Below, piece by piece: positions 12,801 through 62,452 of a DNA stretch of 64,000 nt. The stretch lies in assembly GCF_006345805.1 (NCBI RefSeq), contig NC_043022.1, forward strand, positions 20,398,001-20,462,000, given 5' to 3'. Source of the DNA: Octopus sinensis (Eukaryota). The notes below the pieces were generated by a model that did not search any database, was not told the DNA's origin, and was given only the letters and a program-made list of their open reading frames with translations. Position 1 is the stretch's first letter. Each line of letters opens with the position of its first letter. A program made the translations under genes and the position numbers.

Positions 12801-14292
12801 TGTCGTACGTTAAGCAGAATTTGATCTGTTTTCACTCATTCACTAATTAACGTAGGCTAACGACACAGTTCAGTGACACCGTATAGTTAACACCATATAG
12901 ATTTCCGGTGCATCCTAGTTAAGGACCATATTCATGTGAATTCATTAGAATCCACTTGAATCTCAATTACTTAAACCGTATATATATATATATATATATA
13001 TAGGCGCAGGAGTGGCTGTGTAGTAAGTAGCTTGTTCCGGGTTCAGTCCCACTCCGTGGCACCTTGGGTAAGTGTCTTCTACTATAACCTCGGGCCTACC
13101 AAAGCCTTGTGAGTGGATTTGGTAGACGGAAACTGAAAGAAGCCCGTTGTATATATGTATATATATATATATGCGTGTGTGTGTTTGTGTGTCTGTGTTT
13201 GCCCCCTAGCATTGCTTGACAACCGATGCTGGTGTGTTTATGTCCCCCATCACTTAGCGGTTCGGCAAAAGAGACCGATAGAATAAGTACTGGGCTTACA
13301 AAAGAATAAGTCCCGGGGTCGAGTTGCTCGATCAAAGGCGGTGCTCCAGCATGGCCGCAGTCAAATGCCTGAAACAAGTAAAGAGTATATATATATATAG
13401 AGTCAGTACAGATAAAGGGTGAAATATAATTAATTTAATAAAATCAACAAATTTCACCAAGTGTAGTCTTTCGGTATGGAAAAGGACCATATTCGGTAAA
13501 ATTATATCTAATTATAGCAATGAGTGTCTTTGCAACAAGTTGCTAGACCACATACCGAAATTATTAGAAATAGCAGCCAGAGGACTGTTATTTCTTTTAC
13601 TACAAAAATATGTCCCCATCGACAACAGTATTTATAAGTCATTATATGGCAAAAAAAACGAAGAAAAATAGCGAAATCAAACAGTCAATATATAGTCAAC
13701 GGGGCGTAACTCTGTTTTACTTCTAAAAGCCACAAGACGAAATTCAATTAAACTGAGTAATCCTGTCCCTTTGCTTGTATCCAGAGAACTGCATGCGGTG
13801 GATGAAGTGTTGCCTGTGTCTTTGTCTTTCCAGTTCCATAGGGTCGCACATGCAAGACACATGACACACAACGCACGACCCGGTCCGGGAATTGAAACCA
13901 CAATCTTGTGATCGTCAGTGCAACACTCTAACCAATAGGCTATGCGTCAAATGGCCCAATTTAATCGAACGTGTATATTTTTGAGCAGTGTATATAACGA
14001 TGTTACTAATAAATAAATAAATAAATAAATAAAGTAAGAAAGAATGAATGAAAGAAAATTCTAAGGCGGTATTTTGTTTCCACCCTTTCCGTAATTTTCT
14101 TGTAACTTCACTTATTCGAAAAATTTTTCTAATATGTTTTAAAAAGTCACGCATATTTGCATATTTTGAAGAAAAATATTCTGAGATTTGAAATTTAAAT
14201 CTGAACATTTTCAAAAAAATTAAAAACTGTAATTTCATTTTGGGATTTGGTTTGCAAGATTCTTTATATGAATTCGTGTGTTGAAGCATATT

Positions 14293-18508: not shown

Positions 18509-19435
18509 CTTCTTCATTGCCACAAACTGCAATATTTCCTACTTCAATTCATCACAGTTCTTCACTTTTTCTTCTTTCCCTTCTATCCTGTTGTCACCAG
18601 GACATACTATGTCAGACATACTATCAAGCAGCTTTTTTTTTACCTCTTCACTACAACAATGTCAGGTTTTTGATGTTTAATCTGATACTAACACTGAATC
18701 ATTGCATCTCAGAGAACTTTTTGTATAGATACATATTATTATTATTAGTTTTATTATTATTTGATTGAAAGAAGGTTCATTCATAAGATGTGACAGCAAA
18801 GAATAGCACACATTCACTCTCTGCATGCGATTAGACTTGGAAAGTTTGTGAGGAACCCATTGACCCAATTTTCTGACTTTTCCAATGGCACGCAGGTGTC
18901 AGTGAATGGTTGAATGACCAAATCCAAGCTTTTTTGCTAGTTCCTCAATGGTTTGACTGGAATTGGCAAGGTTGGAGAGCTGCACCAGTCTGATTGGATT
19001 AGTTTCCACAGTTGGATGCCCTTCCTTAATAAACCCAATCTGTTTCTTAAAGGAGGGACATATTCATTATGCACAGAATGTTATTTACCTAAATGGACGC
19101 CAGTGATTGGTTAAAATTGCCAAAATGCTCGAAATTAAAGATGAAATATGTTACAACATATAGAATTTTCTCAATAAAGCCAAGAAAAAATGATGTTTTA
19201 TAAACACATTCTACCAGTATACGAAGTTTAAAACTTTTTAGTTACCTAGAAATTATGTTACAAAGGCGTAGGAGTGGCTGTGTGGTAAGTAGCTTGCTAA
19301 CCAACCACATGGTTCCGGGTTCAGTCCCACTGCGTGGCATCTTGGGCAAGTGTCTTCTGCTATATCCCCGGGCCAACCAATGCCTTGTGAGTGGATTTGG
19401 TAGATGGAAACTGAAAGAAGCCTGTCGTATGTATG

Positions 19436-19468
<33 letters not shown>

Positions 19469-20450
19469 GGGTGGGTTTGTGTGTCTGTGTTTGTCCCCCT
19501 AGCATTGCTTGACAACCAATGCTGGTGTGTTTACGTCCCCGTCACCTAGCGGTTCGGCAAAAGAGACCGATAGAATAAGTACTGGGCTTACAAAGAATAA
19601 GTTCCATGGTCGATTTGATCGACTAAAGGCGGTGCTCCAGCATGGCCGCAGTCAAATGACTGAAAAGAGTAAAAGAGAGTAAAGTGCCGTTCAAAAGGAA
19701 AGGATCCAAAACAAATTTTGATTAATAAAAATCAACATGAAACGCTTTAATTTAGACAACTTTAAAACAGGAAGCTTGAACCAGAGAATTAGGAGCTGTC
19801 TCTGATCAACCCGTTAGTATAAATAGGATCATCCTTTTTATGAAAGGATTAATCCTTTTTGTAAACCTTTTGATAGACAGGCATTTGTGATAATCTGGCA
19901 GCATATGAAAAGAAGAGAGGCTCCGGCTGCGGCAAAAACTTGACACATCAAGGTGTACCACCCTACTGACTGACATATTCGAGTACATTTTTTCCTGACT
20001 TATGGACTCTAAGACTGGTCAGCTTGCCCAATGGCAAGTGGGACCATGCATCATTATAATCCATATATATGGGGCCCATGTTAGTATCTAAGGGACCCGT
20101 ACCCTCAAGTTTGAGAATATTTGTTCACTCCTGGAAAAATGCATTAATTATTTCAGCCTGGCTGTATTTGTAGACAGAGGAAAAGAATAGTTTTAACAAA
20201 AAAAAAAAAATAATAATTATAGCATTGTAGTTGCGGTGGGACCCCTTAGTCTCCTGGCAACCAATAATTTTAGACCCAGTCAATGGTCGTGACTTCTGGT
20301 ACTTGACTGATGAAAGAAAGCCAAGAATGACCCGTCTTTTTTGGCCTGTCCTTCTAATTGTTGTTTCTCTTGTCCGCCTTTGTATCATCTATCTGTCCGA
20401 AGGTTTAAAGCCCTTTATTCTGTTTTTGTTCCAAATTATATATATATGTA

Positions 20451-23128: not shown

Positions 23129-23630
23129 GACTTTGCCTTTCATCCTTTCAGGGTCGATTAAATAAGTACCAGTTACCCACTGGGGTCGATGTAATCGATT
23201 TAATCCGTTTGTCTGTACTTGTTAGTCCTCTCTGTGTTTGGCCACTTGTGGGTAGTAAAGAAATAGGTATTTCGTCTGCCGTTACGTTCTGAGTTCAAAT
23301 TCCACCGAGGTCGATTTTGCCTTTCATCCTTTCGGGGTCGATTAAATAAGTACCAGTTACGCACTAGGGTCGATGTAATCGACTTAATCCGTTTGTCTGT
23401 CCTTGTTTGTCCTCTCTGTGTTTAGCCCCTTGTGGGTAGTAAAGAAATAGGTATTTGATCTGCCGTTACGTTCTGGGTTCAAATTCCGCCGAGGTCGACT
23501 TTGCCTTTCATCCTTTCGGGGTCGATAATTTAAGTACCAGTTACGTACTGGGGTCGATCTAATCGACTGGCCCCCTCCCAAAAAGTTTCAGGCCTTGTGT
23601 CTAGAGTAGAAAAGAACATAGTACGCCATT
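23129..23630 (+). mobile_element. SINE-B multimer (tRNA head plus Meta/Nin-like core gcctttcatcctttcggggtcgat)
   Basis: ~180-bp head-to-tail units with B-box gagttcaaattcc. Other copies: 15390-15530, 17255-17390(-), 31794-32029, 41345-41750(-), 50800-51400(-), 60865-61045. Confidence 0.8.
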
Positions 23631-23729
23631 ATAAATCTACGCCATTGTACATCATTAGCTTGCAGCTATAGTGCACTTACCATCGACATACAGTAGAGCA
23701 TACCACCCGCCGCTTAAAGTACACTAGAC

Positions 23730-24200
23730 CATCATCACCGCCGCCGCCATTGCTGCTGCCACAACCACCCTGCACCAGAGTAGACTACCAGCCATCTTAA
23801 CACCATCCGCTATATGTTCGTAGATGACCACCACTACCGACTCCACCGCCACCAGCGCCGCCACCACCACCACCACCACCACCAGCGCTGCTGCCGACAC
23901 TATCACCGCCGCCACCACCGTCGTCGCCACCAACACCACTACCACCGCCACCGCTGCCATCACCACTGCTACCACCATTACTTCCACCACCACCACCACC
24001 ACCACCACCACCACCACTACCACCACCGCCGCCGCCATCACCACTACCACCAGTACCACAAGCACCGCTATCACCTCTACCACCATTACCACCGCCGCCG
24101 CCACCACCACCCACCACCATCTCTACCACGTCCATCACCACCACCAATACCACTACCGCCGCCACCACTACCACCACCACCACCGCCCAACTCTACTATA
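23730..24200. repeat. (CCA/CCG)n low complexity
   Basis: Degenerate trinucleotide runs producing poly-T/H/G/V pseudo-ORFs. Confidence 0.85.
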
Positions 24201-24546
24201 CCATTTCCATTATCACGACTATCGTACAAATTGCCTGGAATAAATGAAAACAATGTCAGATAAATTAGTTTATTTAAAAAAGACCCTTGTGGAATACGAT
24301 GTGAGGGGTAGGATGAGTGGGGGTTGGAAGGAGAGAGAGAGAGAGAGAGGCGGAGAGAAAGTGAATTGGAGAGAGAAAGAGAGAGGGGGAGAGGTAGAGG
24401 AAGATTGGGAGACAGAGAAGGATTGTAAGAGAAATATGATGGGGGGGGGGGCGATCGCATGAAACCTGGTAAAGAAAGAGAAAAAAAATGGATGGAAATG
24501 TGAGAGAGAGGGGTGAGGAAGAATGGCAGTGAGTGAAACTAGGAAT

Positions 24547-24591
<45 letters not shown>

Positions 24592-25135
24592 GTATATAGT
24601 TGTAAAATAGAAGACTACGTTGGAACATCAGCGTGTGTGTGTGTATGACTGTGAGAGAGAGAATGTTTAAGTGAAAGAAATAAGCGTGAGGGCATGTGTA
24701 TGTGTACGTGTGTATATGTGCGTGTGTATATGTGCGTGTGTATATGTGCGTGTGTATATGTGCGTGTGTATATGTGCGTGCGTGTGTGTGTGTGTGTGTG
24801 TATGTGTGTAATCGACAGAGTAGAAATGGGTGAGTGCCAGTGTGATGAGAGTCAAATTAATATTTACAGTATATTTGTTGGGTTTTTTTTTTCTTTTTTA
24901 TTGTTTAGTTATATTTTGTAAACAGAATTATGAGCCTTCACCGTATATTGACAATAAAAAAAAATAGTTTAATATTAGTTCGTATAAGCCTCTGTCCAAA
25001 TATTAAACAATTTTTCGTAGTCAATAAACGGTGAACTCTCATAATTCTCTCTACAAAATTTCATTTGCTGCCGTTAACTAATTCACGCACAATTCGCACA
25101 TCATTAACATTTTTTTTTGTCTTCTTTCGTTACAG

Positions 25136-25261
25136 ACGTCATCCTGGCCAACACATCTGGCAGACGAACAGAGCAGCATCGAAGACGGTTCTAATCCAGA
25201 CATTCTAATACTCATTTCCTGTCACCACCAGCATTCAAGCTCTTTGAATGTCAGCTAGCAA
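25136..25261 (+). other. 5'UTR part of the GT62 coding exon, following a 3' splice site
   Basis: ttttttttgtcttctttcgttacag|acgtc at 25111-25140 is a strong polypyrimidine tract plus AG; implies upstream non-coding exon(s). Confidence 0.65.
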
Positions 25262-26569
25262 ATGTATATCGTCAGGAGATTCTCCAACCGACGGAGTTTC
25301 TGTGGGAGCTTAGCAATAATCATTCTGCTCTGCTGTTTGGTCTACGCTTTGCTTGGTTCACATCTGAGGATAATAGCTGTTTCAAACTTCCAGCTCATCA
25401 GGAAGTCTTTGCCAGAAGATTTACTGCGCCATGCAACTACTCGACAGACAAGTTCCCAACATGGCAACGCTGCGTGGCACACTAACCGCAATGTCGTCAC
25501 AGCTTCTACATTGGCAAAAAATATTTCTAAATTACATTCCAAACAGATGACGACGCACCAAAATGTAATCCAAAAAAAAGTTATTAAAAAATTAATTTCT
25601 GATATCAAGCAATCTAATCCAAAAAGTTTTCACGAAACAAAACATGTAAAAGAAGAGGCCTTGAAAAAAGACAATTTTCCAAAACGTTTTCATATACCTG
25701 ATGTGCCCCCTGTGTCTGTTGATGACACAGTTCCTTATATACCAAAACCTGTGATAAATCATTTCTTAACGTTACCAAAACGAGAATACACAGAAGAAGT
25801 TCTTATTTTGACTCCAATTCATAATGTCGCTGATCATTTGAATCACTATACTAATCTACTGAAGAATTTGACCTATCCTCGCCACCTGGTATCAGTGGCA
25901 CTCGGTGAGGACTGTAGCACTGACGAGACGTTGATTGTGGCAAAGGGTGTTGTTGAAGAACTGTCTCGCATATTCAAAACAGCCAGGCTGTTTCACTTTA
26001 ACTTAACTGGTCAAATAACTGGGCGATGGAGTGTCGTGCATGATCACGCAATGCAGTTGTCACGGCGCAGCCATCTGGCGAAATCACGTAATCTCCTCCT
26101 ACGGAACAGTCTGAAAGACGAAACATGGGTCATGTGGATTGACAGCGACGTGTCACGCATACCCGGTGACTTGGTTCAGCAGCTAATCTCAGCTGACAAG
26201 GATGTTGTAGTTCCATCTTGCCTTTTTCATGATGGAGTCAACACAAGAGTTTATGATAAGAACACTTGGCGGGAGACAAATTTATCATGGGAAAAGCAAA
26301 AACACCTACCGCCAAACCAATTGGTTCTAGAGGGATACGGTCCCTCAAATCGGCTGTATTTACCTCACCTGCGTGCAGAGGGTCGTCTGGTACCCATAGA
26401 CGGCGTTGGTGGCTGCAGTCTTCTCGTTCGAGGAGACTGTCACAGAAAAGGATTGGTATTTCCAGAAGAAATATACCAAAATCATATAGAAACGGAAGGT
26501 TTATCAAAGATGGCAAGAACTATGAAATTTTCTGTGTATGGAATGCCTTTTGTCGAAGTTTACCATTAA
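25262..26569 (+). CDS. Anp1/Mnn9/Van1-family (GT62, Pfam Anp1-like) glycosyltransferase, type II Golgi membrane topology, 435 aa, intronless CDS
   Basis: Uninterrupted 435-codon ORF in non-repetitive sequence. N-terminal TM anchor (SLAIIILLCCLVYALLG) and ~115-aa stem. Motifs EEVLILTP, LTYPRHLV, RRSHLAKSRNLLL, WVMWIDSDV (DxD at 26141-26149), YDKNTW, LVLEGY, IDGVGGCSLLV, HRKGLVFP and HIETEGLSKMAR...VYGMPFVEVYH* are collinear with recalled yeast Mnn9 motifs (VLILTP, LNYPRELI, WVLWLDADI, YDFNNW, LDGVGGG, LIETEGFAKMAK...FGLPNYLVYH). Acceptor (poly-T...ttacag) at 25111-25135 upstream; AATAAA at 26732-26737. Confidence 0.9.
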   Translation: MYIVRRFSNRRSFCGSLAIIILLCCLVYALLGSHLRIIAVSNFQLIRKSLPEDLLRHATTRQTSSQHGNAAWHTNRNVVTASTLAKNISKLHSKQMTTHQNVIQKKVIKKLISDIKQSNPKSFHETKHVKEEALKKDNFPKRFHIPDVPPVSVDDTVPYIPKPVINHFLTLPKREYTEEVLILTPIHNVADHLNHYTNLLKNLTYPRHLVSVALGEDCSTDETLIVAKGVVEELSRIFKTARLFHFNLTGQITGRWSVVHDHAMQLSRRSHLAKSRNLLLRNSLKDETWVMWIDSDVSRIPGDLVQQLISADKDVVVPSCLFHDGVNTRVYDKNTWRETNLSWEKQKHLPPNQLVLEGYGPSNRLYLPHLRAEGRLVPIDGVGGCSLLVRGDCHRKGLVFPEEIYQNHIETEGLSKMARTMKFSVYGMPFVEVYH

Positions 26570-26925
26570 AAAGAATATAAAGTTTAGCAGATTAAAATTT
26601 TATCTGATAAGAAAAATTATTGAAATTTTATCTGGAAGAAAGAAAAAAAAAAAAAGAATTCAGAATGGAAATGCTATTTTCAATGTAAATTAATTCGGAT
26701 TTGAAACGTTCTATAAATCATTTCATGCTGGAATAAATATGTTTTGATAATGCCTTATGTTTAATATATAAATCACACGAAAAAGAAAAACATACTACCA
26801 TTTTATAATAATATAAAATCATACTTCAATGTTCTTTGTCTATTTATTATTGTTTTTTGTTGTTGTTATTCTACTTCTGCTCCTTTTTATGATTCTTATC
26901 ATTATTGTTTTATTTCTTGTTATCA

Positions 26926-26958
<33 letters not shown>

Positions 26959-27149
26959 GTTATTATTATTACTATTATTATTATTATTATTATTATTGTT
27001 GTTGTTATTGCAATTGTTGTGATGCTGGCAGTGGAGGTGGGGGAGTGTTGTTTGTTCCACTCCTCCTGTTATTCTTGAAAACCAAAATTTCTTACATGAC
27101 CAGAAGGCTATGGAAATCAGATTACAGAGCAGAGATTAGTTCCACAAAT

Positions 27150-27154
27150 TGAAA

Positions 27155-27214
<60 letters not shown>

Positions 27215-27635
27215 CACGTATGTAAAGATACATACATTTTTGTATGTGTATATATATATGTGTGTGTGCGTTTGTGTGTGTGTGTATGTGTGTGTATATT
27301 GATAGAAATGGTAAGACAACAAAAGAATGAAAGAGACCTCGATATTATGTAAATAGAGGAATCTATCTGTAGCTATAATATGCGGCAATTATTCGGTCGG
27401 TAGCCATGATAAAACTCCGAGTTTCGGATGTCGGGGCGGAACCCACGCCGCAGGTCATTTTCATAGCATTTTTTCGATGGCCGGATAACTGAAGGATAGC
27501 GGATGGGTTTCCGCCCCGACATCCGAAACTCGGAGTTTTATCATGGCTACCGAATAACTTCACATGTTATGATTACAGATGTATATGTATATATATATAT
27601 ATATAATATATATATATAATATATATTATATATAT

Positions 27636-30103: not shown

Positions 30104-31047
30104 CGTCCATATGACACTTGGCGGTCCATATGACTCCTGGCGGACCATATGACTCTTGGCGGTCCAGATGGCTCTTGACGATCCATATGACTCTTGACGG
30201 TCCATATGACTCTTAACGGTCCATATGACTCTTGACGGTCCATATGACTCTTGACGGTCCATATGACTCTTGGCGGTCCATATGACTCTTGACTCCATAT
30301 AACTCTTGACAGTCTATATGACTCCTGGTGGATCATATGACTCTTGACGGTCCATATGACTCTTAACGGTCCATATGACTCTTGACGGTCCATATGACCC
30401 TTGACGGTCCATATGACTCTTGACGGTTCATATGACTCCTGGCGGACCATATGACTCTTGGCGGTCCATATGACTCTTGACGATCCATATGACTCTTGAC
30501 GGTCCATATGACTCTTAACGGTCTATATGACTCTTAACGGTCCATATGACTCTTGACGGTCCATATGACTCTTAACGGTCCATATGACTCTTGGCGGTCC
30601 ATATGACGCTTGACGGTTCATATGACTCTTGACAGTCCATATGACTCTTGACGGTCCATGACTCTTGACGGTCCATATGACTCTTGACGGTCCATATGAC
30701 TCTTGGCGGTCCATATGACTCTTGACAGTCCATATAACTCTTGACAGTCTATAATATGACTCCTGGCGGATCATATGACTCTTGACGGTCCATATGACTC
30801 TAAACGGTCCATATGACTCTTGACGGTCCATATGACTCTTGACGGTCCATATGACTCTTGACGGTTCATATGACTCCTGGCGGACCATATGACTCTTGGC
30901 GGTCCATATGACTCTTGACGGTCCATATGACTCTTAACGGTCCATATGACTCTTGGCGGTCCATATGACGCTTGACGGTTTAAATGACTCTTGACAGTCC
31001 ATATGACTCTTGACGGTCCATATGACTCTTGACGGTCCATATAACAC
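30104..31047. repeat. 19-bp minisatellite (tgacggtccatatgactct), ~49 units, higher-order structure
   Basis: Periodic unit; variant blocks recur (e.g. actcctggcggaccatatg at ~30135, 30435, 30875). Confidence 0.95.
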
Positions 31048-31489
31048 TTAGTTCAATGTTGTTTGCAATAAATCGGTTACATTTCTGCAATACACAAAAT
31101 ATCTTAACAATTTTTTTAAAATACAATTCCTAATGATACTAAATTATAAGGATATTTTTAAATATCTAATGGCTCCTGTCGACCGGAGTAAAATAAGAAT
31201 TAAAAGGGTCCCATAGATAAATAATCGTTGAAAACCACTGGACTAAGCTTTCTTTTGTATTCTTGACCACCACCTAGACCTCCTTCCCGTCGAAGTCCAG
31301 AGCAAATCGAGATTTTCTAAAAGCTCAGATCTTACTACTCGTATTCATCCCCGAGGGTCTCTCAGGGGTAAATGAGATAGAATAAGTACTAGGCTTACAA
31401 AGAATAAGTCCTGGGGTCGATTTGCTCGATCGACTAAAGGCGGTGCTCCAGTATGGCCGCAGTCAAATAACTGAAATAAGTAAAACAGT

Positions 31490-35546: not shown

Positions 35547-35602
<56 letters not shown>

Positions 35603-35987
35603 CTCTTTACTCTTTTACTTGTCTTTTACGTGGCCATGCTGGAGCTGCCTTTAGTCGAGCAACTCGACCCCGGGACTTATTCTTTGCAAGCCCAGTACTT
35701 ATTCTATCGGTCTCTTTGCCGAACCGCTAAGTTACGGGGACGTAAACACCACGCATCAGTTGTCAAGCAATGCTAGGGGGACAAACACAGACACACAAAC
35801 AAACACACATACATATATATATATCACATATACGCAGGCTTCTTTCAGTTTCCGTCTACCAAATCCACTCACAAGGCATAGGTCGGCCCGGGGCTATAGC
35901 AAAAGACACTTGCCCAAGATGCCACGCAGTGGGACTGAACCCGGAACCATGTGATTGGTAAGCAAGTTACTTACCACACAGCCACTC

Positions 35988-36028
<41 letters not shown>

Positions 36029-36309
36029 TAATAATAATAATATCGCATATCTTGTCCTTACCTTCGTATCGCGGAGTAGACGACACAGGGACATCTGAAG
36101 AAGGGGAATATTCCTAGAGTTGTAGGCCTTGTACTCTGTTCTTTCGTTGTTTGAAAAATAGTCCCGTTTCCATGTTTTTGTTTTTAAGTTTCTGTTTCAC
36201 ATTGTGTTCAACGTTCTTTTTGATGTCCTGTACCCATCTATGCATGTATATATACACATAGATGTATGTATATATACATATAGATGTAGGTATGTACATA
36301 TATGTATGT

Positions 36310-39027: not shown

Positions 39028-39473
39028 CAGGGTTGGCCAAAAGTCACCCGACAATAAATCAAAACCATTTAATTCCAAGATTTCTGTTTAACCCCTTTCG
39101 TTACCGACCCAGCTGAAACCGGCTCTGGCTTTGAATACAAATGTCTTGTTATCATAAGTTTTGAATTAAAATCTTCCACCAAACCTTAATCACAATTTAT
39201 GTTCCTAACACTAGCTGAATGATAACAAAATTATTTTACTACATTCTTAGTTATATTTAAAGTAATTGAAAGAAACACAGAGCTTCTCAAAATAAATACA
39301 GTAACGAAAGGGTTAACAACTGAATGAATTTTAATAAAAGTATCCAGATAAGAAATATCATGAAAATTGTTCAAACTTAAGTCCTTCTTGAGCGACACAT
39401 TTTTCCATTCGAGTCAATACAGAATTACAGATAGAATTTTGATTTACTGTTGGATGACTTTTGGCCAACCCTG
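39028..39473. mobile_element. Tc1-like MITE
   Basis: TA|cagggttggccaaaagtca ... tgacttttggccaaccctg|TA. Confidence 0.8.
39092..39312. mobile_element. piggyBac-type MITE nested in the Tc1 MITE
   Basis: TTAA TSDs (39088-39091, 39313-39316); TIRs ccc(c)tttcgttac / gtaacgaaaggg. Confidence 0.8.
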
Positions 39474-39500
39474 TATGTATTTGTGTATGTGTATATAAGT

Positions 39501-40196
39501 GTATACAAGCCTCAAATTGTGTAGGTCTTTACCTCAATGAGGCCAAGACTGAATATATAAACAAGTGCCTGTCCAGCAGTGATTGCATCATCCATACTCT
39601 CAACAATGCGCCCTTAAATATGGTTTCTGATTACAAATATCTTGGGTCATACATATCAACTGGAAAAGATTTTCTAACTAGAAAGGGTATGGCCTGGTCA
39701 GCCTGTAATGACATGCATAAGATCTGGTCATCAAATCTAAGTAGAGACTTCAAACTTGAAATCTTCAAAGCCACAGTCAAACCAATTCTACTATATGGCT
39801 CAGAAACCTGGACGTTATCAAAGAAGCTTGAGAGGCGGTTGGATGGAACCTACACTCGCCTCCTTATGAGAGCTCAAAAACTCTCGTGGAAGCGTCATCC
39901 AACCAAAATGCAAATATATGGGAAACTATCACCTGTGTCATCTCTTGTGAAAGGTAGGAGAGTCCAGTTTGCTGGACATTGTTGTAGAGCTGAAAACGAG
40001 GCAATTTCTCCTCTTCTCCTCTGGAAGCCATCTACTCGCAATACCAGAGGGCGCACACTCTCCTACCCTGATGTAATCTCCAGGGATACAGGCATCCAGC
40101 AACAGGACCTCCGTAATGCCATGATGGACCGTGAAGTCTGGCGTAGCATGGTAAATTCCATTGTCTCGACCACGGTCGAACAATGATGATGAATGA
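39501..40196 (+). mobile_element. 5'-truncated RTE-clade LINE (RT C-terminus and 3' end)
   Basis: Open frame with GLYLNEAKT, YKYLGS, LLYGSETWTL, RRVQFAGHC; (ATG)n tail; 11-bp TSD tgtatataagt at 39490-39500 and 40197-40207. Confidence 0.9.
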
Positions 40197-41321: not shown

Positions 41322-42185
41322 GTAGCAGAAATAATAATAATAATAATAGTTTCAAATTTTGGCACAAGGCCAGCAAATTCAGAGGCGGGGTTAAATCGAT
41401 TATATCAACTTCAGTGTTTAACTGGTACTTATTTTATTGACCCCAAAAGGATGAAGGGGAAAGTCAACCTCGGTGGAATCTGAACTCAGAAATGTAACAA
41501 CGGGTGAAATACCTATTTCTTTATTGCCCACAAGGGGCTAAACACAGAGAGGACAAACAAGGACAGACAAATGGATTAAGTCGATTATATCAACCCCAGT
41601 GCCTTAACTGGTATTTATTTAATTGACCCCGAAGGGATGAAAGGCAAAGTCGACCTCGGCGGAATTTGAACTCAGAACGCAGTGGCGGACATAATACCAC
41701 AAAGCATTTCGCCCGGTGTGCTAACGGTTCTGCCAGCTCACCGCCTTAATAATAACAACAACAACAACAACGGTAAATAATGATAAATAGAGGATTATAA
41801 AATTAACAATAGTAATAATGATAGAGAATTGGTGATTAGTTAATACCAGATCATATATTAATTAATAAATATTAAAATTAATAAAACAAAATACTTTTTT
41901 TAAAAGTCACCCCTTTTAAAGGGTCAGTATAGTATTTTCATAATTATATATATATATATATACATAAATACATATATATACATACATACATGTGTATATA
42001 CATATTCTATATATGTAACGTTTCTAAAAGATGTTTTGGTCTTGTTTTTGTTTTTTCTGCTTTTACCATATATGGATCCAATGTGGACTCCTCTCATCCT
42101 TTGAAGAATTTGTAACTTTTGCATTGTTTTCTTTCAAGGTCAATCATTTTTTTTTTAGAAATATATTGGGATTTAATTTTTTAAT

Positions 42186-45171: not shown

Positions 45172-46481
45172 CATATACGACAGGCTTCTTTCAGTTTCCG
45201 TCTACCAAATCCACGTATATATATATATATATACAAATCATACTGCATTTATATAATTAAGTGTTGCTGGGAATTGTATTAATCATCATCATTGTTTAAT
45301 GTTCACCTTCCATTGATGGGACAGTTTCACAAGAACCAGCCAGGTAGAAGCCTGCACCAGATTTCTGCGACTGTTTTGGCAGGATTTTTAGAGCTGGATG
45401 CCCTTCTTAATACCAACCACTCAGCAGAGTGGACTTAGTGCTTTTTACGTGGCACAAGCACAGGCAAGGTCAGTTTTGGCAAGGGTTTTACAGCTGGATG
45501 CCCTTCCGAACACCAACCACTTTATAGTATGGACTGGGTGCTTGTAAGTGGTACCTGCACTGTCAGGGTCACCAAGTACTTACAAGATGAAAAAAAAACT
45601 TTCAAGAGGGGAGAGGGGGGGCATTAAAAAGTTAAGATATTTTGTATAATATAGATGTTACGTGTTTCAGTCATTTGACTGTGCCATGCAGGAGCACCAC
45701 CTTTAGTCGAAGAAACTGACCCCAGACTTATTCTTTGTAAGCTTAGTACTTATTCTACCGGTCTCTTTTGCCAAACTGCTAAGTGACGAGGACATAAACA
45801 CACCAGCATCGATTGTCAAGCGATGTTGGGGGACAACACAGATACACAAACATATACACATGCATACACATATACATACATATATACGACGGGCTTCTTT
45901 CAGTTTCCGTCTACCAAATCCACTCACAAGGCTTTGGTCGGCCCAAAGCTATAGCAGAAGACACCTGCTCAAGGTGCCATGCAGTGGGACTGGACCCGGA
46001 ACCATGTGGTTGATAAGCAAACTACTTACCACACAGCCACTCCTGCACATAAAATTCCTGTACATGAATTTTAACAACAAAATCTTGTATGGGCTCTTCC
46101 CCCAAGGATCATATGAATCCTAGTTGAGAACCAATGCCAAGTTAAGTCTTTTTTCTGTCTCCTTTTAACATTCATCATCATCATCGTTTAACGTCCGCTT
46201 TCCATGCTAGCATGGGTTGGACGGTTCAACTGGGGTCCGTGAAGCCTGAAGGCTGCACCAGGCCAGTCAGATCTGGCAGTGTTTCTACAGTTGGATGCCC
46301 TTCCTAATGCCAACCACTCCGTGAGTGTAGTGGGTGCTTTTTACGTGCCACCAACACAGGTGCCAGACGAGGCTGGTGAACGGCCACGCTCGGATGGTGC
46401 TTTTTATGTGCCACCATCAGAACTCAACATAAGATGAGGACGATGATGATGATGGTTATATATATCTGAGTACATACGTAC

Positions 46482-46969: not shown

Positions 46970-48279
46970 CGACAGGCTTCTTTCAGTTTCCGTCTACCAA
47001 ATCCACGTATATATATATATATATATACAAATCATACTGCATTTATATAATTAAGTGTTGCTGGGAATTGTATTAATCATCATCATTGTTTAATGTTCAC
47101 CTTCCATTGATGGGACAGTTTCACAAGAACCAGCCAGGTAGAAGCCTGCACCAGATTTCTGCGACTGTTTTGGCAGGATTTTTAGAGCTGGATGCCCTTC
47201 TTAATACCAACCACTCAGCAGAGTGGACTTAGTGCTTTTTACGTGGCACAAGCACAGGCAAGGTCAGTTTTGGCAAGGGTTTTACAGCTGGATGCCCTTC
47301 CGAACACCAACCACTTTATAGTATGGACTGGGTGCTTGTAAGTGGTACCTGCACTGTCAGGGTCACCAAGTACTTACAAGATGAAAAAAAAACTTTCAAG
47401 AGGGGAGAGGGGGGGCATTAAAAAGTTAAGATATTTTGTATAATATAGATGTTACGTGTTTCAGTCATTTGACTGTGGCCATGCAGGAGCACCTCCTTTA
47501 GTCGAAGAAACTGACCCCAGGACTTATTCTTTGTAAGCTTAGTACTTATTCTACCGGTCTCTTTTGCCAAACTGCTAAGTGACGAGGACATAAACACACC
47601 AGCATCGATTGTCAAGCGATGTTGGGGGACAAACACAGATACACAAACATATACACATGCATACACATATACATACATATATACGACGGGCTTCTTTCAG
47701 TTTCCGTCTACCAAATCCACTCACAAGGCTTTGGTCGGCCCAAAGCTATAGCAGAAGACACCTGCTCAAGGTGCCATGCAGTGGGACTGGACCCGGAACC
47801 ATGTGGTTGATAAGCAAACTACTTACCACACAGCCACTCCTGCACATAAAATTCCTGTACATGAATTTTAACAACAAAATCTTTTATGGGCTCTTCCCCC
47901 AAGGATCATATGAATCCTAGTTGAGAACCAATGTCAAGTTAAGTCTTTTTTCTGTCTCCTTTTAACATTCATCATCATCATCGTTTAACGTCCGCTTTCC
48001 ATGCTAGCATGGGTTGGACGGTTCAACTGGGGTCCGTGAAGCCTGAAGGCTGCACCAGGCCAGTCAGATCTGGCAGTGTTTCTACAGTTGGATGCCCTTC
48101 CTAATGCCAACCACTCCGTGAGTGTAGTGGGTGCTTTTTACGTGCCACCGACACAGGTGCCAGACGAGGCTGGTGAACGGCCACGCTCGGATGGTGCTTT
48201 TTATGTGCCACCCATCAGAACTCAACATAAGATGAGGACGATGATGATGATGGTTATATATATCTGAGTACATACGTAC

Positions 48280-50716: not shown

Positions 50717-52742
50717 TTAGACGTAGGAATAAATATTAACAGAAGCTGAAACAGAACAAAAAAAGATAAAACAAGAAATTAGATTTTTTAACTCTCTCCT
50801 GTTTTTTACTACCCACAAGGGGCTAAACACAGAGGGGACAAACAAGGACAGACAAACGGATTAAGTCGATTACATCGACCCCTGTGCATAACTGATACTT
50901 ATTTTATTGACCCCAAAAGGATGAAAGGGAAAGTCAACCCCAGTGGAATCTGAACTCAGAAACCTAACAACGGGCGAAATACCTATTTCTTTACTACCCA
51001 CAAGGGGCTAAACACAGAGGGGACAAACAAGGACGGACAAACGGATTAAGTCGATTACATCGACCCCAGTGCATAACTGATACTTATTTTATTGACCCCA
51101 AAAGGATGAAAGGGAAAGTCAACCCCAGTGGAATCTGAACTCAGAAACCTAACAACGGGCGAAATACCTATTTCTTTACTACCCACAAGGGGCTAAACAC
51201 AGAGGGGACAAACAAGGACAGACAAACGGATTAAGTCGATTACATCGACCCCAGTGCGTAACTGGTACTTATTTAATCGACCCCGAAAGGATGAATGGCA
51301 AAGTCGACCTCAGCGGAATTTGAACTCAGAACTTAACGGCAGACAAAATACGGCTACGCATTTCGCCCGGCATGCTAACGTTTCTGCCAGCTCGCTGCCA
51401 AGTCATCATCATCATTTAACATCTGTTTTTCCCTGCTGGCAGGGGTTGGTTGGTTGGTTTGATTGGAGCTGCTATGCTGGAGAGTTACACCATTTTGACC
51501 TGTTCTCTATGGCTGGATGCCCTTCGTAATGACAACCACTCTATAGTGTGTACTAAGTATCTTTTACATGTCACCAGCATGGATGCCTTTTATGTGTCAC
51601 CAGCACTAGAGGCCTTTGTTATGGGTTTTAATTTTTTCTCACCAGCTGTATTCTTTCCCAGAAGCACCAGGTGATTATTTTTCCAGTAAACACAATAGGT
51701 GCAGGAGTGGCTGTGTGGTAAGTAGCTTGCTTACCAGCTACATGGTTCCGGGTTCAGTCCCACTGCATGGCACCTTGGGCAAGTGTTTTCTACTATAGCC
51801 TCGGGCCGACCAAAACCTTGTGAGTGGATTTGGTAGACGGAAACTGAAAGAAGCCTGTCGTGTATATGTATATATATATGTGTCTGTGTTTGTCTCCCCA
51901 ACATTGCTTGACAACCGATGCTGGTGTGTTTACGTCCCCGTAACTTAGCGGTTCGGCAAAAGAGACCGATAGAATAAGTATTAGGCTTACAAAGAATAAG
52001 TCCCGGAGTCGATTTGTTCAACTAAAGGCGGTGCTCCAGCATAACACAAAAAAAAAATACACAAACATAAGCAATTCATTTGAAAAAAATTAGACATAAA
52101 AAAAAATTTACGGAAATTACTGAACAAATACTTTCAGTTTTGATATAATTTCTGCGAAATTGCCTTGATTTCTTAATTAGACACAAAGTGTCAAAAATGT
52201 TAAGAATGGCCACAGCAAATCTATGACTAAAAAGTGTTTTACCAGGATCATCCTACCTAGCTGGTGTAATTTCGGGCATAGTTATGATCGCCATATATAT
52301 ATATATAGGCATTCTTACGTTATATATATATAACTATCATCATCATCGTACTCATCTTATATTGAGTTCTGATGGGTGGCACGTAAAAAGCACCATCCGA
52401 GCGTGGCCGTTCACCAGCCTCGTCTGGCACCTGTGTCGGTGGCACGTAAAAAGCACCCACTACACTCACGGAGTGGTTGGCGTTAGGAAGGGCATCCAGC
52501 TGTAGAAACACTGCCAGATCAGACTGGAGCCTGGTGCAGCCTTCGGGCTTCCCAGACCCCAGTTGAACCGTCCAACCCATGCTAGCATGGAAAACGGACG
52601 TTAAACGATGATGATGATGATATATGGGTACGGAACGTCTCAAAACGTAAACAATATGAACTATGAAGGCAAACTTGGGTATGCTAACAACGAGAGAAAC
52701 AAATGGAAAACAAGACAACTAGCAAATCGATATATATATATT

Positions 52743-61598: not shown

Positions 61599-62199
61599 AT
61601 TAGTATATGACATCAGTGATGGGTGTCTATGTGAGAGTGTGTGTGTGTCTGACTTTTCAATTCTATCCAGCAGATGAAACAATGACACAGGCTCATTCAT
61701 AATGTCATAGACTTTTACCGAAAGATTGGCTTTATTTTTTTTAAGTCTTGTACTTATTGTATCAGTTCTCCAACGCCAAACCGCTATGTGCAAGGGCATG
61801 GACAAACCATCACCAATTGTTAAATGATGGTTTGGGGAACAAACAAAGATACACATATACACGACAGCTTTCTTCACAGCTTCCGTCTACCAAATCTACT
61901 CTCAGTGTATTGGTCTGAACTATAGTAGAAGACACCTGACCAAGGTGTCATAATTACTTAATTAAAAATAGCAAAACTTATTCTCTTTCTCTTTTACTTG
62001 TTTCAGTCATTTGACTGTGGCCATGCTGGAGCACCGCCTTTAATCGAGCAACTCGACCCCGGGACTTATTCTTTTGTAAGCCCAGTACTAATTTTATCGG
62101 ACTATTTTGCCGAACCGCTAAGTAACGGGGACATAAACACACCAGCATCGGTTGTCAAGCAATGCTAGGGGGACAAACACAGATACACAAACACACACA

Positions 62200-62244
<45 letters not shown>

Positions 62245-62452
62245 GACGGGCTTCTTTCAGTTTCCGTCTACCAAATCCACTCACAAGGCTTTGGTCGGCC
62301 CGAGGCAATAGTAGAAGACACTTACCTAAGGTACCATGCAGTAGGACTGAACCCGGAACCATGTGGTTGGTAAACAAGCTACTTACCACACAGCCACTCC
62401 TGCGCTTTTCTTCTTTTTATTTTTGTTGCTTTCATTTTATTGGTTTTTCTAG

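What the first reader, a model, noticed from the sequence alone, without database searches (positions are those of the whole stretch)
25136..26740. Fungal/bacterial-type Anp1/Mnn9 (GT62) mannosyltransferase embedded in an animal genome
Seen: an intact, intronless 435-aa ORF with TM anchor, long stem, DxD motif and the full ordered GT62 motif set, ending in VYH as Mnn9 nearly does. It has a spliceosomal acceptor in the 5'UTR, a poly(A) signal and host microsatellites on both sides, so contamination is unlikely. Established: characterised GT62 members are the fungal Golgi mannan polymerase subunits Mnn9/Van1/Anp1, which build alpha-1,6-mannan backbones; vertebrates lack this pathway and uncharacterised bacterial homologues exist. 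Inference: a domesticated gene, possibly horizontally acquired (intronless CDS, added anchor/stem), that could give this animal an undescribed mannan-like or other glycan-elongation pathway (mucus, skin, egg coat or host-microbe interface). Automated MNN9-like annotations may already exist in other invertebrates, so the novelty may be functional rather than taxonomic.
Basis: partly seen in the sequence, partly recalled or inferred. Interest (0 to 1): 0.8.

Follow-up and report, generated by a model that had tools for sequence, protein, structure and literature searches.

The report
Octopus Mnn9-like GT62 glycosyltransferase gene
This is a genuine, selectively maintained octopus gene for a yeast-Mnn9-type (GT62) Golgi glycosyltransferase; it is not a recent import or a contaminant but one of two ancient copies shared by molluscs, annelids and ribbon worms, and nobody knows what sugar chain it builds.

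Summary
Window 25262-26569 (+) is an intact, intronless 435-aa ORF. It matches Pfam Anp1/GT62 (174.7 bits against a 28.8 cutoff), and yeast Mnn9 (3zf8) is the best match by sequence and by predicted fold. Every residue shown or proposed to be needed in ScMnn9 is conserved; the Mn2+-ligand His is the last residue. The window is Octopus sinensis chromosome DNA. An independent O. vulgaris assembly is collinear across the ORF and both flanks, and a 5'-UTR splice acceptor is conserved in Argonauta, so this is not contamination.

The interpretation needs revising. The gene is not special to octopus. Intronless orthologues occur in cephalopods, gastropods, bivalves, chitons, annelids and a nemertean, forming one clade (72-84% bootstrap) separate from bacteria (89-94%) and carrying eukaryote-type signatures. 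O. sinensis has a second, 40%-identical intronless paralogue on another chromosome, in a lineage shared with Argonauta and a chiton. Amphioxus has an unrelated-looking, intron-containing GT62. The catalytic domain is under strong purifying selection (omega about 0.03-0.10). Databases already label these genes "mnn9-like", but I found no paper on them.

Any horizontal transfer is ancient (lophotrochozoan stem) and unproven. Activity, product and A/B partnership are inferred.

The parts
25113..25135 (+). Polypyrimidine tract plus CAG: the predicted 3' splice site of a 5'-UTR intron.
   Evidence: Read from the sequence. Acceptor-like tract at -126 from the ATG. Positionally conserved in Argonauta hians at -120, with similar sequence just downstream of the AG. 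Actual splicing was not shown, because no RNA data were available.
25136..25261 (+). Predicted 5'-UTR part of the coding exon.
   Evidence: In-frame stops lie upstream of the ATG. Partial sequence conservation with Argonauta.
25262..26569 (+). Intronless CDS, 435 aa plus stop: GT62 (Anp1/Mnn9/Van1 family) glycosyltransferase, lophotrochozoan lineage 'A'.
25298..25360 (+). N-terminal signal-anchor / transmembrane segment (about aa 13-33), preceded by a short basic cytosolic tail (MYIVRRFSNRRSF).
   Evidence: Kyte-Doolittle maximum 2.73 at aa 13-31. AlphaFold helix at aa 14-49. Conserved as a feature in most homologues.
25409..25780 (+). Stem region (about aa 50-173): low complexity, fast evolving.
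   Evidence: pLDDT below 50 for aa 55-80, 90-97 and 121-130. Omega 0.26-0.56, against 0.03-0.10 for the catalytic domain.
25781..26566 (+). GT-A catalytic domain (aa 174-435).
   Evidence: Pfam Anp1 at aa 174-402. 3zf8 alignment over aa 177-435. pLDDT 91-99. Foldseek top hit 3zf8, E=3.8e-23, TM 0.77, rmsd 2.7 A.
26063..26068 (+). R268-R269, equivalent to ScMnn9 R209/R210 (sugar-binding and specificity pocket).
   Evidence: R209A is inactive in yeast (PMC3787745). The two positions are Arg in 109 and 110 of 111 aligned sequences.
26141..26149 (+). DxD motif D294-S295-D296, equivalent to ScMnn9 D236/D238.
   Evidence: Invariant in alignments A1 and A4.
26255..26257 (+). D332, equivalent to ScMnn9 D280, at the end of the family-specific beta-hairpin (aa 320-335).
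   Evidence: D280N is inactive in yeast. The hairpin is 16 residues in animals and 22 in ScMnn9. Strands at aa 315-323 and 328-330 in the model.
26564..26566 (+). H435, the last codon, equivalent to ScMnn9 H389 (Mn2+ ligand).
   Evidence: Nearly all homologues end 0-3 residues after this His.
26570..26737 (+). Predicted 3' UTR with two candidate poly(A) signals: ATTAAA at 26591-26596 and AATAAA at 26732-26737.
   Evidence: Usage was not tested.

Best explanation
The feature is a bona fide nuclear gene of Octopus sinensis. It encodes a type II membrane, Golgi-type GT-A glycosyltransferase of CAZy family GT62 (Pfam Anp1; the Mnn9/Van1/Anp1 family).

Shown:
- Family membership by profile, by sequence match to a solved structure and by predicted fold.
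- Conservation of every residue shown or proposed to be needed for ScMnn9 catalysis: the DxD Asp pair, the Mn2+ His, and the Arg-Arg/Asp/Glu/Glu-Thr pocket proposed to hold mannose and set the alpha-1,6 linkage.
- Integration in the host chromosome, with the same flanks in a second species.
- Strong purifying selection on the catalytic domain.
- Membership of an old animal clade with intronless coding sequences, shared by molluscs, annelids and nemerteans.
- A second, deeply diverged paralogue (lineage B) in the same genome.

Inferred:
- The protein sits in the Golgi with its catalytic domain in the lumen, binds GDP-mannose and Mn2+, and transfers mannose with retention, most likely in alpha-1,6 linkage, onto a glycoprotein or glycolipid acceptor.
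- By analogy with the yeast Mnn9-Van1 heterodimer, the A and B paralogues may work as a pair.

Origin: the gene entered or was already present in the lineage no later than the common ancestor of molluscs, annelids and nemerteans. Whether that was an ancient eukaryote-to-animal transfer, a retrogene, or vertical descent with many losses is unresolved.
For: - Family: Pfam Anp1 174.7 bits, cutoff 28.8; 3zf8 E=7e-29; Foldseek top hit 3zf8 E=3.8e-23, TM 0.77, rmsd 2.7 A, with the next GT-A enzymes at about 1e-14; model pLDDT 91-99 in the domain.
- Catalytic residues: R268, R269, D294, D296, D332, E357, E410, T411 and H435 correspond to ScMnn9 R209, R210, D236, D238, D280, E305, E364, T365 and H389. 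R209A, D236N, D280N and H389A are inactive in yeast.
- Host gene: the exact protein lies on the 25.5-Mb record CM016884.1 of GCA_006345805.1. O. vulgaris has a continuous 4.5-kb block at 95.65% identity across the ORF and both flanks, plus collinear blocks downstream. The 5'-UTR acceptor is conserved in Argonauta. CDS GC is 0.42 against 0.36 in the flanks. Bacterial promoter and terminator signals are not above chance.
- Selection: catalytic domain omega 0.098 against O. vulgaris (6 synonymous, 2 non-synonymous differences); dN 0.099 with saturated dS against Argonauta.
- Distribution: named homologues in more than 25 molluscs, 3 annelids and 1 nemertean.
- Intronless CDS in Octopus A and B, Argonauta, Haliotis, Owenia and Lineus.
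- Tree: lophotrochozoan clade 72-84%, bacteria 89-94%, mollusc A clade 91%, cephalopod A 100%.
- Eukaryote-type signatures: Glu at the E305 position (Gln in 12 of 12 bacteria); hairpin of 16 residues, within the fungal range of 16-22, against 13-14 in bacteria and algae.
- Paralogue B: P0313, 376 aa, on CM016883.1, 40% identical, Anp1 176 bits, with a TM anchor and its own upstream acceptor-like site. The B lineage also includes Argonauta and the chiton Liolophura.
Against: - No expression data could be examined. The Logan contigs carrying cephalopod homologues end in simple repeats and cannot be assigned to RNA or DNA.
- No biochemical data exist for any animal GT62.
- The guanine-covering residue Q124 of ScMnn9 is His in the octopus protein. 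This position is variable across the family: Lys in 11 of 12 fungal sequences.
- No mannan-type product is described in mollusc glycan reviews.
- The trees are neighbour-joining only. Deep eukaryotic nodes have under 25% support, so the sister group and therefore the origin are unresolved.
- The A/B heterodimer idea rests only on analogy.
Confidence: 0.82

Rival explanations
1. Ancient horizontal transfer. One GT62 gene, from an intron-poor eukaryote such as an early fungus or a protist, or arriving as a processed copy, entered the lophotrochozoan stem lineage. It later duplicated into lineages A and B and picked up a 5'-UTR intron. This concerns origin and is compatible with the best explanation of function.
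For: All named animal hits in this clade are Mollusca, Annelida or Nemertea. No other annotated animal phylum appears among the top-scoring hits, although RefSeq proteins are in the database. The coding sequence is intronless in every lophotrochozoan gene checked, across three phyla and both paralogues. Vertical descent would need many independent losses. GT62 has been reported as horizontally acquired in green algae (PMC11811186).
Against: The clade does not nest in any sampled donor group. It is about equally distant from early fungi, cyanobacteria and picoalgae, at 175-180 bits each. Absence from other animals and from unicellular holozoans was not tested exhaustively: only the top 120 hits are listed per search, and many sequences are unnamed. 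Amphioxus has a GT62 too, so the family is not strictly lophotrochozoan among animals.
Confidence: 0.45
2. Vertical inheritance. GT62 was present in the opisthokont ancestor, retained in fungi and in a few animal lineages (Lophotrochozoa, perhaps amphioxus), and lost everywhere else.
For: The animal clade lies with the eukaryotic part of the tree and is separated from bacteria (89-94%). It shares eukaryote-type states at the E305 position and in hairpin length with fungi. GT62 is present in deep fungal lineages including aphelids and chytrids. A deuterostome, Branchiostoma, also has a GT62 gene with introns.
Against: The amphioxus gene is not sister to the lophotrochozoan clade (11-15% bootstrap). 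It differs at the signature positions: Ala at the E305 position and a 14-residue hairpin. This scenario needs roughly ten or more independent losses. The intronless CDS across the whole clade is unusual for an old animal gene.
Confidence: 0.3
3. Recent acquisition or assembly contamination: a fungal or bacterial gene present only in this octopus assembly.
For: Intronless ORF of a family best known from fungi.
Against: The same gene with the same flanks is present in an independent O. vulgaris assembly. Orthologues in Argonauta and two other cephalopod-like sequences follow the species tree. Host microsatellites and interspersed repeats lie on both sides. The upstream splice acceptor is conserved. 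The closest non-animal sequences are only 35-42% identical.
Confidence: 0.01
4. Same fold, different chemistry. The animal GT62 enzymes have changed donor or acceptor, for example to another GDP-sugar, a different linkage, or a non-N-glycan acceptor such as mucin O-glycans, glycolipids or a secreted polysaccharide. In that case they do not make an alpha-1,6-mannan.
For: No mannan-like product is known from molluscs. The hairpin thought to position the acceptor is 6 residues shorter than in ScMnn9. The guanine-covering residue differs. Bacterial relatives sit in multi-glycosyltransferase fusions that probably make diverse polysaccharides.
Against: All residues proposed to bind the mannose and define the alpha-1,6 pocket are conserved in both paralogues and in 28 of 28 named animal sequences, apart from T-to-S in two.
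Confidence: 0.3

Closest known systems
[quoted passage not shown]
   Same: Best sequence match among solved structures (E=7e-29) and best fold match (TM 0.77, rmsd 2.7 A). Type II membrane topology. DxD motif, Mn2+ His, Arg-Arg, loop Asp and Glu/Glu-Thr pocket all conserved. Beta-hairpin extension present.
   Different: About 26-30% identity. The hairpin is 16 residues rather than 22. Q124 is His. The protein ends exactly at the metal-binding His. There is a long disordered stem. The animal clade is a separate branch, so it is not an orthologue of Mnn9, Van1 or Anp1 specifically. The organism has no cell wall and no known mannan.
Yeast Mnn9-Van1 heterodimer (M-Pol I)
   Same: Octopus, Argonauta and a chiton each carry two deeply diverged GT62 paralogues, A and B, about 40% identical. 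Both have intact catalytic residues and TM anchors. This matches the two-subunit logic of M-Pol I, in which Mnn9 primes and allosterically activates Van1 (PMC3787745).
   Different: The A/B pair arose by duplication inside the animal clade, independently of the fungal Mnn9/Van1 split. Physical interaction is untested. Annelid and nemertean B-lineage members were not identified.
GT62 genes of early-diverging fungi (Mucoromycota, Kickxellomycotina, chytrids, aphelids)
   Same: 35-39% identity over the whole domain. Same signature states: Glu at the E305 position and a hairpin of at least 16 residues. Single-domain type II proteins.
   Different: They cluster apart from the animal clade and are presumed to act in cell-wall mannoprotein synthesis.
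Bacterial GT62-like domains (cyanobacteria, Chloroflexota, Streptomyces, Acidobacteriota, Proteobacteria)
   Same: Same Pfam family with DxD, Arg-Arg, loop Asp and terminal His. 366 loci confirmed in the species-level genome collection.
   Different: They form a separate cluster (89-94% bootstrap). Gln replaces Glu at the E305 position. The hairpin is shorter (13-14). The domain is often the C-terminal module of 700-1800-aa multi-glycosyltransferase fusions.
Branchiostoma floridae 'mannan polymerase complex subunit mnn9-like' (XP_035670100.1)
   Same: The only other animal GT62 identified here. Catalytic residues are intact and the protein ends at the His.
   Different: Four coding exons. Ala at the E305 position. 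A 14-residue hairpin. It is not sister to the lophotrochozoan clade (11-15% bootstrap) and scores slightly better against bacterial and fungal sequences than against molluscs.

Membership tests
CAZy GT62 / Pfam Anp1 (PF03452) | Significant match to the family profile above the curated threshold | tested here: met
   174.7 bits against a 28.8 cutoff, E=3.3e-51, profile positions 17-261 of 263. Paralogue B scores 176.1 bits.
CAZy GT62 / Pfam Anp1 (PF03452) | GT-A fold closest to the only solved GT62 structure (ScMnn9) | tested here: met
   The AlphaFold2 model has pLDDT 91-99 in the domain. Foldseek against the PDB puts 3zf8 first: E=3.8e-23, TM 0.77, rmsd 2.7 A over 280 columns. This is a predicted structure, not an experimental one.
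CAZy GT62 / Pfam Anp1 (PF03452) | DxD motif and C-terminal His that bind Mn2+ (ScMnn9 D236/D238, H389) | tested here: met
   D294, D296 and H435. Invariant across alignments A1 and A4.
CAZy GT62 / Pfam Anp1 (PF03452) | Sugar and linkage pocket residues R209, R210, D280, E305, E364/T365 of ScMnn9 | tested here: met
   R268, R269, D332, E357, E410 and T411. Residue roles are taken from PMC3787745.
CAZy GT62 / Pfam Anp1 (PF03452) | Family-specific beta-hairpin extension next to the active site (ScMnn9 I262-N283) | tested here: met
   Present as aa 320-335, but 16 residues rather than 22. Strands at aa 315-323 and 328-330 in the model.
CAZy GT62 / Pfam Anp1 (PF03452) | Type II membrane protein: short cytosolic tail, signal anchor, stem, luminal catalytic domain | tested here: met
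   Hydropathy peak at aa 13-31, AlphaFold helix at aa 14-49, disordered stem. Golgi localisation itself was not tested.
CAZy GT62 / Pfam Anp1 (PF03452) | Mn2+-dependent GDP-Man:alpha-1,6-mannosyltransferase activity | not testable with these tools
   Requires an enzyme assay. Only residue conservation supports it.
Mannan polymerase complex (M-Pol I type: two different GT62 subunits) | A second, distinct GT62 subunit encoded in the same genome | tested here: met
   P0313 on CM016883.1, 40% identical, catalytically intact.
Mannan polymerase complex (M-Pol I type: two different GT62 subunits) | Physical heterodimer and cooperative chain elongation | not testable with these tools
Orthologue of fungal Mnn9 specifically (as database names imply) | Groups with fungal Mnn9 to the exclusion of other GT62 subfamilies | tested here: not met
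   Animal sequences form their own clade, which does not group with ScMnn9. Van1 and Anp1 sequences from Dikarya were not in the data set, so subfamily sampling was thin. Names such as 'mnn9-like' or 'anp1-like' are best-hit labels.
Horizontally transferred gene in an animal | Physically integrated in the host chromosome, with host-type gene signals | tested here: met
Horizontally transferred gene in an animal | Nests phylogenetically inside a donor group | tested here: not met
   No donor group was identified. The deep nodes are unresolved and bacteria are excluded.
Horizontally transferred gene in an animal | Absent from the sister lineages of the recipient | tested here: inconclusive
   Named hits in the clade are only Mollusca, Annelida and Nemertea. 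Hit lists are truncated, many sequences are unnamed, and amphioxus carries a divergent GT62.

The most novel reading that the evidence does not exclude
Lophotrochozoans (molluscs, annelids, nemerteans) possess a conserved two-subunit GT62 machine, made of paralogues A and B, that works like the yeast Mnn9-Van1 polymerase. It would build a so far undescribed alpha-1,6-mannose-based extension or polymer on secreted or surface glycoconjugates such as mucus, egg coats or shell/cuticle matrix. The ancestral gene would have entered the lophotrochozoan stem by transfer from a eukaryotic microbe more than 500 million years ago.
Probability: 0.2. Interest if true: 0.75.

Novelty: new member of a known kind. 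Interest (0 to 1): 0.45.

Why it matters
GT62 enzymes are textbook fungal cell-wall enzymes and antifungal-target candidates, and animals are generally assumed to lack them. This analysis shows that a whole superphylum of animals keeps at least one, and molluscs two, catalytically intact GT62 genes under strong purifying selection. No known glycan product accounts for them. That gives glycobiologists a concrete, testable lead: express A and B, assay with GDP-Man, and look for alpha-1,6-mannosidase-sensitive structures in mollusc glycomes. It also gives evolutionary biologists a clean case for testing ancient eukaryote-to-animal transfer against massive gene loss. Practically, it warns that 'mnn9-like' labels in invertebrate genomes are real genes rather than fungal contamination. 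It also shows that presence of GT62 cannot be used as a fungus-specific marker in marine metagenomes or in mollusc-associated samples.

Tried and rejected
- **Contamination or recent HGT.** Rejected on collinearity with O. vulgaris, the cephalopod orthologues and the conserved acceptor.
- **Bacterial origin.** Rejected for the sampled bacteria: separate cluster at 89-94% and a different residue at the E305 position. Bacterial promoter and terminator scans were at chance level.
- **NCBIfam.** Gave only sub-threshold noise.
- **Transcript evidence.** Contigs L010-L015 carry a cephalopod homologue in six sequencing runs, but they break in simple repeats, so RNA or DNA origin cannot be decided. 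A cluster member seen on 110 contigs is suggestive only.
- **Profile scan of bacterial genomes.** The first attempt with the broad alignment failed because no stretch was conserved enough. It worked with a narrower alignment.
- **Literature.** Searches for GT62/Mnn9/Anp1 in animals found nothing relevant. 'mnn9' in a mollusc immunity review refers to yeast mutants used as feed. The supplements of the metazoan HGT compendium are not held.
- **Amphioxus as orthologue.** I considered that its GT62 might prove vertical descent. It does not group with the lophotrochozoan clade and differs in gene structure and signature residues.
- **C-terminal His.** Ending at the His first looked special, but it is family-wide.
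- **Unnamed sequences.** Many ENA, Logan and JGI sequences in the animal clade could not be assigned to a phylum.
Full report
**1. What is there**

Window positions 25262-26569 (+) hold an uninterrupted ATG-to-TAA reading frame of 435 codons. It is the only long non-repetitive ORF in the 64-kb window. The one other candidate is a 241-aa retroelement-like fragment at 39461-40186. The ORF is flanked on both sides by microsatellites and minisatellites. The exact protein is encoded on a 25.5-Mb chromosome record, CM016884.1 of assembly GCA_006345805.1, and part of that locus is identical to the window. A second protein from the same assembly is named 'Octopus sinensis' by RefSeq, so the window is O. 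sinensis nuclear DNA.

**2. Family assignment**

- The protein matches Pfam Anp1 (PF03452) at 174.7 bits against a gathering score of 28.8, E=3.3e-51, over aa 174-402.
- It matches the only solved GT62 structure, S. cerevisiae Mnn9 (3zf8), at E=7e-29 over aa 177-435.
- An AlphaFold2 model built on a 56-sequence alignment is confident in the catalytic domain, with pLDDT 91-99. It shows an N-terminal helix at aa 14-49 that contains the hydrophobic anchor, and a disordered stem at aa 55-130.
- Foldseek against the PDB returns 3zf8 first (E=3.8e-23, TM 0.77 on the target, rmsd 2.7 A). The next GT-A enzymes are about nine orders of magnitude behind.

**3. Catalytic competence**

The ScMnn9 paper (PMC3787745) shows that R209A, D236N, D280N and H389A abolish activity. 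It proposes that R209, R210, D280, E305 and T365 shape the alpha-1,6 pocket, and that E364/T365 help hold the mannose. In the octopus protein these positions are R268, R269, D294 (with D296), D332, E357, E410, T411 and H435. All are conserved.

H435 is the final residue. This looked unusual at first, but almost every family member ends 0-3 residues after this His. The family-specific beta-hairpin is present but has 16 residues rather than 22. ScMnn9 Q124, which covers the guanine, is His here. That position is variable, being Lys in 11 of 12 fungal sequences. On sequence grounds the enzyme should therefore be active, and the conserved pocket points to GDP-mannose and an alpha-1,6 linkage. This is inference, not demonstration.

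**4. It is a host gene**

- An independent O. vulgaris assembly carries the orthologue, 99% identical in protein. One continuous 4.5-kb alignment at 95.65% spans the ORF and both flanks (window 23129-27635), and collinear blocks continue to window position 36149.
- A polypyrimidine tract plus CAG ends at 25135, 126 nt before the ATG. Argonauta hians has the same arrangement at -120, with recognisably similar sequence after the AG. Synonymous sites between the two species are saturated, so this conservation is meaningful. It supports a real 5'-UTR intron.
- Candidate poly(A) signals lie at 26591-26596 and 26732-26737.
- CDS GC (0.42) is close to flank GC (0.36).
- Bacterial promoter and terminator patterns are at chance level.
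- Contamination and recent transfer are excluded.

**5. Selection**

Nei-Gojobori estimates:

| Comparison | Region | Result |
|---|---|---|
| O. sinensis vs O. vulgaris | whole CDS | 8 synonymous, 6 non-synonymous differences; omega 0.22 |
| O. sinensis vs O. vulgaris | catalytic domain | omega 0.10 |
| O. sinensis vs Argonauta | catalytic domain | dN 0.099, dS saturated (above 3); omega about 0.03 or lower |
| both comparisons | anchor and stem | omega 0.26-0.56 |

The faster-evolving stem is usual for Golgi glycosyltransferases. The gene is maintained by purifying selection.

**6. Distribution**

- A word-indexed search of 5.8 billion proteins found 108 homologues. The named ones come from cephalopods, gastropods, bivalves, a chiton and annelids.
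- Profile searches added the annelid Capitella, the nemertean Lineus, and large expansions in venerid clams, with at least eight Mercenaria paralogues.
- Several are already labelled 'mannan polymerase complex subunit mnn9-like' or 'anp1 subunit-like' by RefSeq or UniRef.
- An exhaustive HMMER scan of 1.84 billion cluster representatives found 1,038 clusters at E<=1e-3.
- At 35-42% identity to the octopus domain there are early-diverging fungi (Mucoromycota, Kickxellomycotina, a chytrid, an aphelid, Geosiphon). There are also picoeukaryote-like compact genomes with conserved DEAD-helicase/Anp1/NOG1 synteny, and bacteria.
- A scan of species-level bacterial genomes confirmed 366 loci in cyanobacteria, Chloroflexota, Streptomyces, Acidobacteriota and Proteobacteria.
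- Many bacterial-type proteins are 700-1800-aa fusions of GT32-like, GT2 and GT4 modules with a C-terminal GT62 domain.

**7. Gene structure across animals**

CDS length equals gene span, meaning no intron in the coding sequence, in all of the following:

- O. sinensis A and B, O. vulgaris and Argonauta
- Haliotis asinina
- the annelid Owenia
- the nemertean Lineus

The intronless state is therefore a feature of the whole clade, not evidence of a recent event in octopus.

**8. Phylogeny**

I built a neighbour-joining tree of 111 catalytic domains (281 columns, 200 bootstraps) and six robustness variants that changed trimming, distance correction and removal of long branches.

| Grouping | Bootstrap support |
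|---|---|
| Lophotrochozoan clade | 72-84% |
| Bacterial cluster | 89-94% |
| Picoalgae | 92-97% |
| Mollusc 'A' clade, internal order roughly following the species tree | 91% |
| Window gene + Argonauta | 99% |
| Those two plus two unnamed cephalopod-like sequences | 100% |
| Deep relationships among animals, fungi and other eukaryotes | below 25% |

Two discrete characters agree with a eukaryotic affinity. The E305 position is Glu in all animals, fungi and algae but Gln in 12 of 12 bacteria. The hairpin is 16 residues in animals and 16-22 in fungi, but 13-14 in bacteria and algae.

**9. A partner paralogue**

The last profile search revealed P0313, 'mannan polymerase complex subunit mnn9 [Octopus sinensis]', 376 aa. 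It lies on a different chromosome (CM016883.1), is intronless, and is 40% identical to the window protein. It scores 176 bits on Anp1 and has all catalytic residues (T365 becomes Ser), a TM anchor and its own upstream polypyrimidine-TAG site.

It belongs to a separate 'B' lineage (79-93% bootstrap) together with Argonauta (P0156) and the chiton Liolophura. The A/B duplication is therefore at least as old as the molluscan crown group. Yeast Mnn9 acts as a heterodimer with its paralogue Van1 (PMC3787745), so an A/B heterodimer is an attractive but untested idea.

**10. Amphioxus**

One unplaced representative turned out to be Branchiostoma floridae XP_035670100.1, 'mnn9-like', on a 34-Mb chromosome. 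It has four coding exons, Ala at the E305 position and a 14-residue hairpin. It scores no better against molluscs than against fungi or bacteria, and it is sister to the lophotrochozoan clade in only 11-15% of bootstrap replicates. Animals thus hold at least two GT62 lineages of unclear relationship.

**11. Origin**

The data exclude a recent transfer and a transfer from the sampled bacteria. They date the gene to no later than the mollusc-annelid-nemertean ancestor. Parsimony and the clade-wide intronless CDS favour one ancient acquisition, or a retrogene founder. The eukaryote-type characters and the lack of any donor clade keep vertical descent with many losses alive. I rate ancient transfer at about 0.45 and vertical descent at about 0.30, with the remainder unresolved. 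Testing this needs named sampling of unicellular holozoans and non-bilaterians, which these tools could not give.

**12. Function and novelty**

I found no paper on an animal GT62 in the searchable library. Reviews of mollusc and eukaryote N-glycans mention neither such an enzyme nor a mannan-type product.

The most likely mechanism is a Golgi-resident, Mn2+-dependent, retaining GDP-Man mannosyltransferase that extends a mannose-containing acceptor, perhaps together with paralogue B. I put about 0.5 on alpha-1,6-mannosyl transfer specifically.

The kind of enzyme is known and the genes are already auto-annotated, so this is a new, uncharacterised member of a known family, not a new kind of system. 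Its interest lies in the conserved, selected and unexplained presence of a 'fungal' pathway component across a major animal clade.

Noticed in passing
L096:10001-11131 (O. sinensis CM016883.1): A second intronless GT62 gene (P0313, 376 aa) in the same genome on another chromosome. It is 40% identical to the window protein and catalytically intact, with a TM anchor and an upstream acceptor-like site. It belongs to a 'B' lineage shared with Argonauta and the chiton Liolophura.
   Followed up: yes
L097:8001-10766 (Branchiostoma floridae CM022888.1): Amphioxus carries a GT62 gene with four coding exons. It does not group with the lophotrochozoan clade and differs at signature positions (Ala at the E305 position, 14-residue hairpin). 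It may be an independent acquisition or a relic.
   Followed up: partly
window ~954-1376, 13034-13392, 19272-19681, 35601-35987, 45658-46046, 47452-47843, 51694-52042, 61986-62399: An interspersed repeat family of about 350-410 bp, in both orientations. It is also present in the O. vulgaris flanks and, as a core of about 90 bp, in Argonauta. It looks SINE-like, but no tRNA or Rfam match was found in the window.
   Followed up: partly
window 23129-23568; related copies at 41388-41744 and 50798-51395: A 184-bp unit in 2.4 tandem copies just upstream of the gene, with dispersed related copies. The O. sinensis / O. vulgaris collinear block starts exactly here.
   Followed up: no
window 23827-24184: A long imperfect ACC/GGT trinucleotide array of about 119 copies, which produces spurious homopolymer-like ORFs in all frames.
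   Followed up: no
window 30105-31050: A minisatellite with a 19-bp register. On the minus strand it gives repetitive ORFs (SRVIWTVKSHMDRQESYGP-like peptide repeats) with no credible family match.
   Followed up: partly
window 39461-40186 (+): A 241-aa ORF resembling the C-terminal part of a retroelement polyprotein. The only hit is a sub-threshold DUF6451 match. It is probably a decayed LINE-type fragment.
   Followed up: partly
P0188, P0200, P0219, P0230, P0254 (representative proteins): Multi-glycosyltransferase fusion proteins of up to 1,837 aa, combining GT32-like (Gly_transf_sug), GT2 and GT1/GT4 modules with a C-terminal GT62 domain. In the tree they sit with bacteria. The GT32+GT62 pairing echoes the fungal order of action, Och1 then Mnn9.
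   Followed up: partly
P0319, P0140, P0321, P0323, P0331, P0145, P0333, P0160 (Mercenaria mercenaria): A large GT62 expansion in the hard clam, with at least eight paralogues. Six lie on one 88-Mb chromosome. The set includes a fast-evolving subgroup.
   Followed up: no
L004, L005, L006, L007: The GT62 homologues of compact picoeukaryote-like genomes share conserved synteny: a DEAD-box helicase upstream and NOG1 GTPase downstream. Glycoside hydrolase genes (GH8, GH16, GH43) lie nearby.
   Followed up: no
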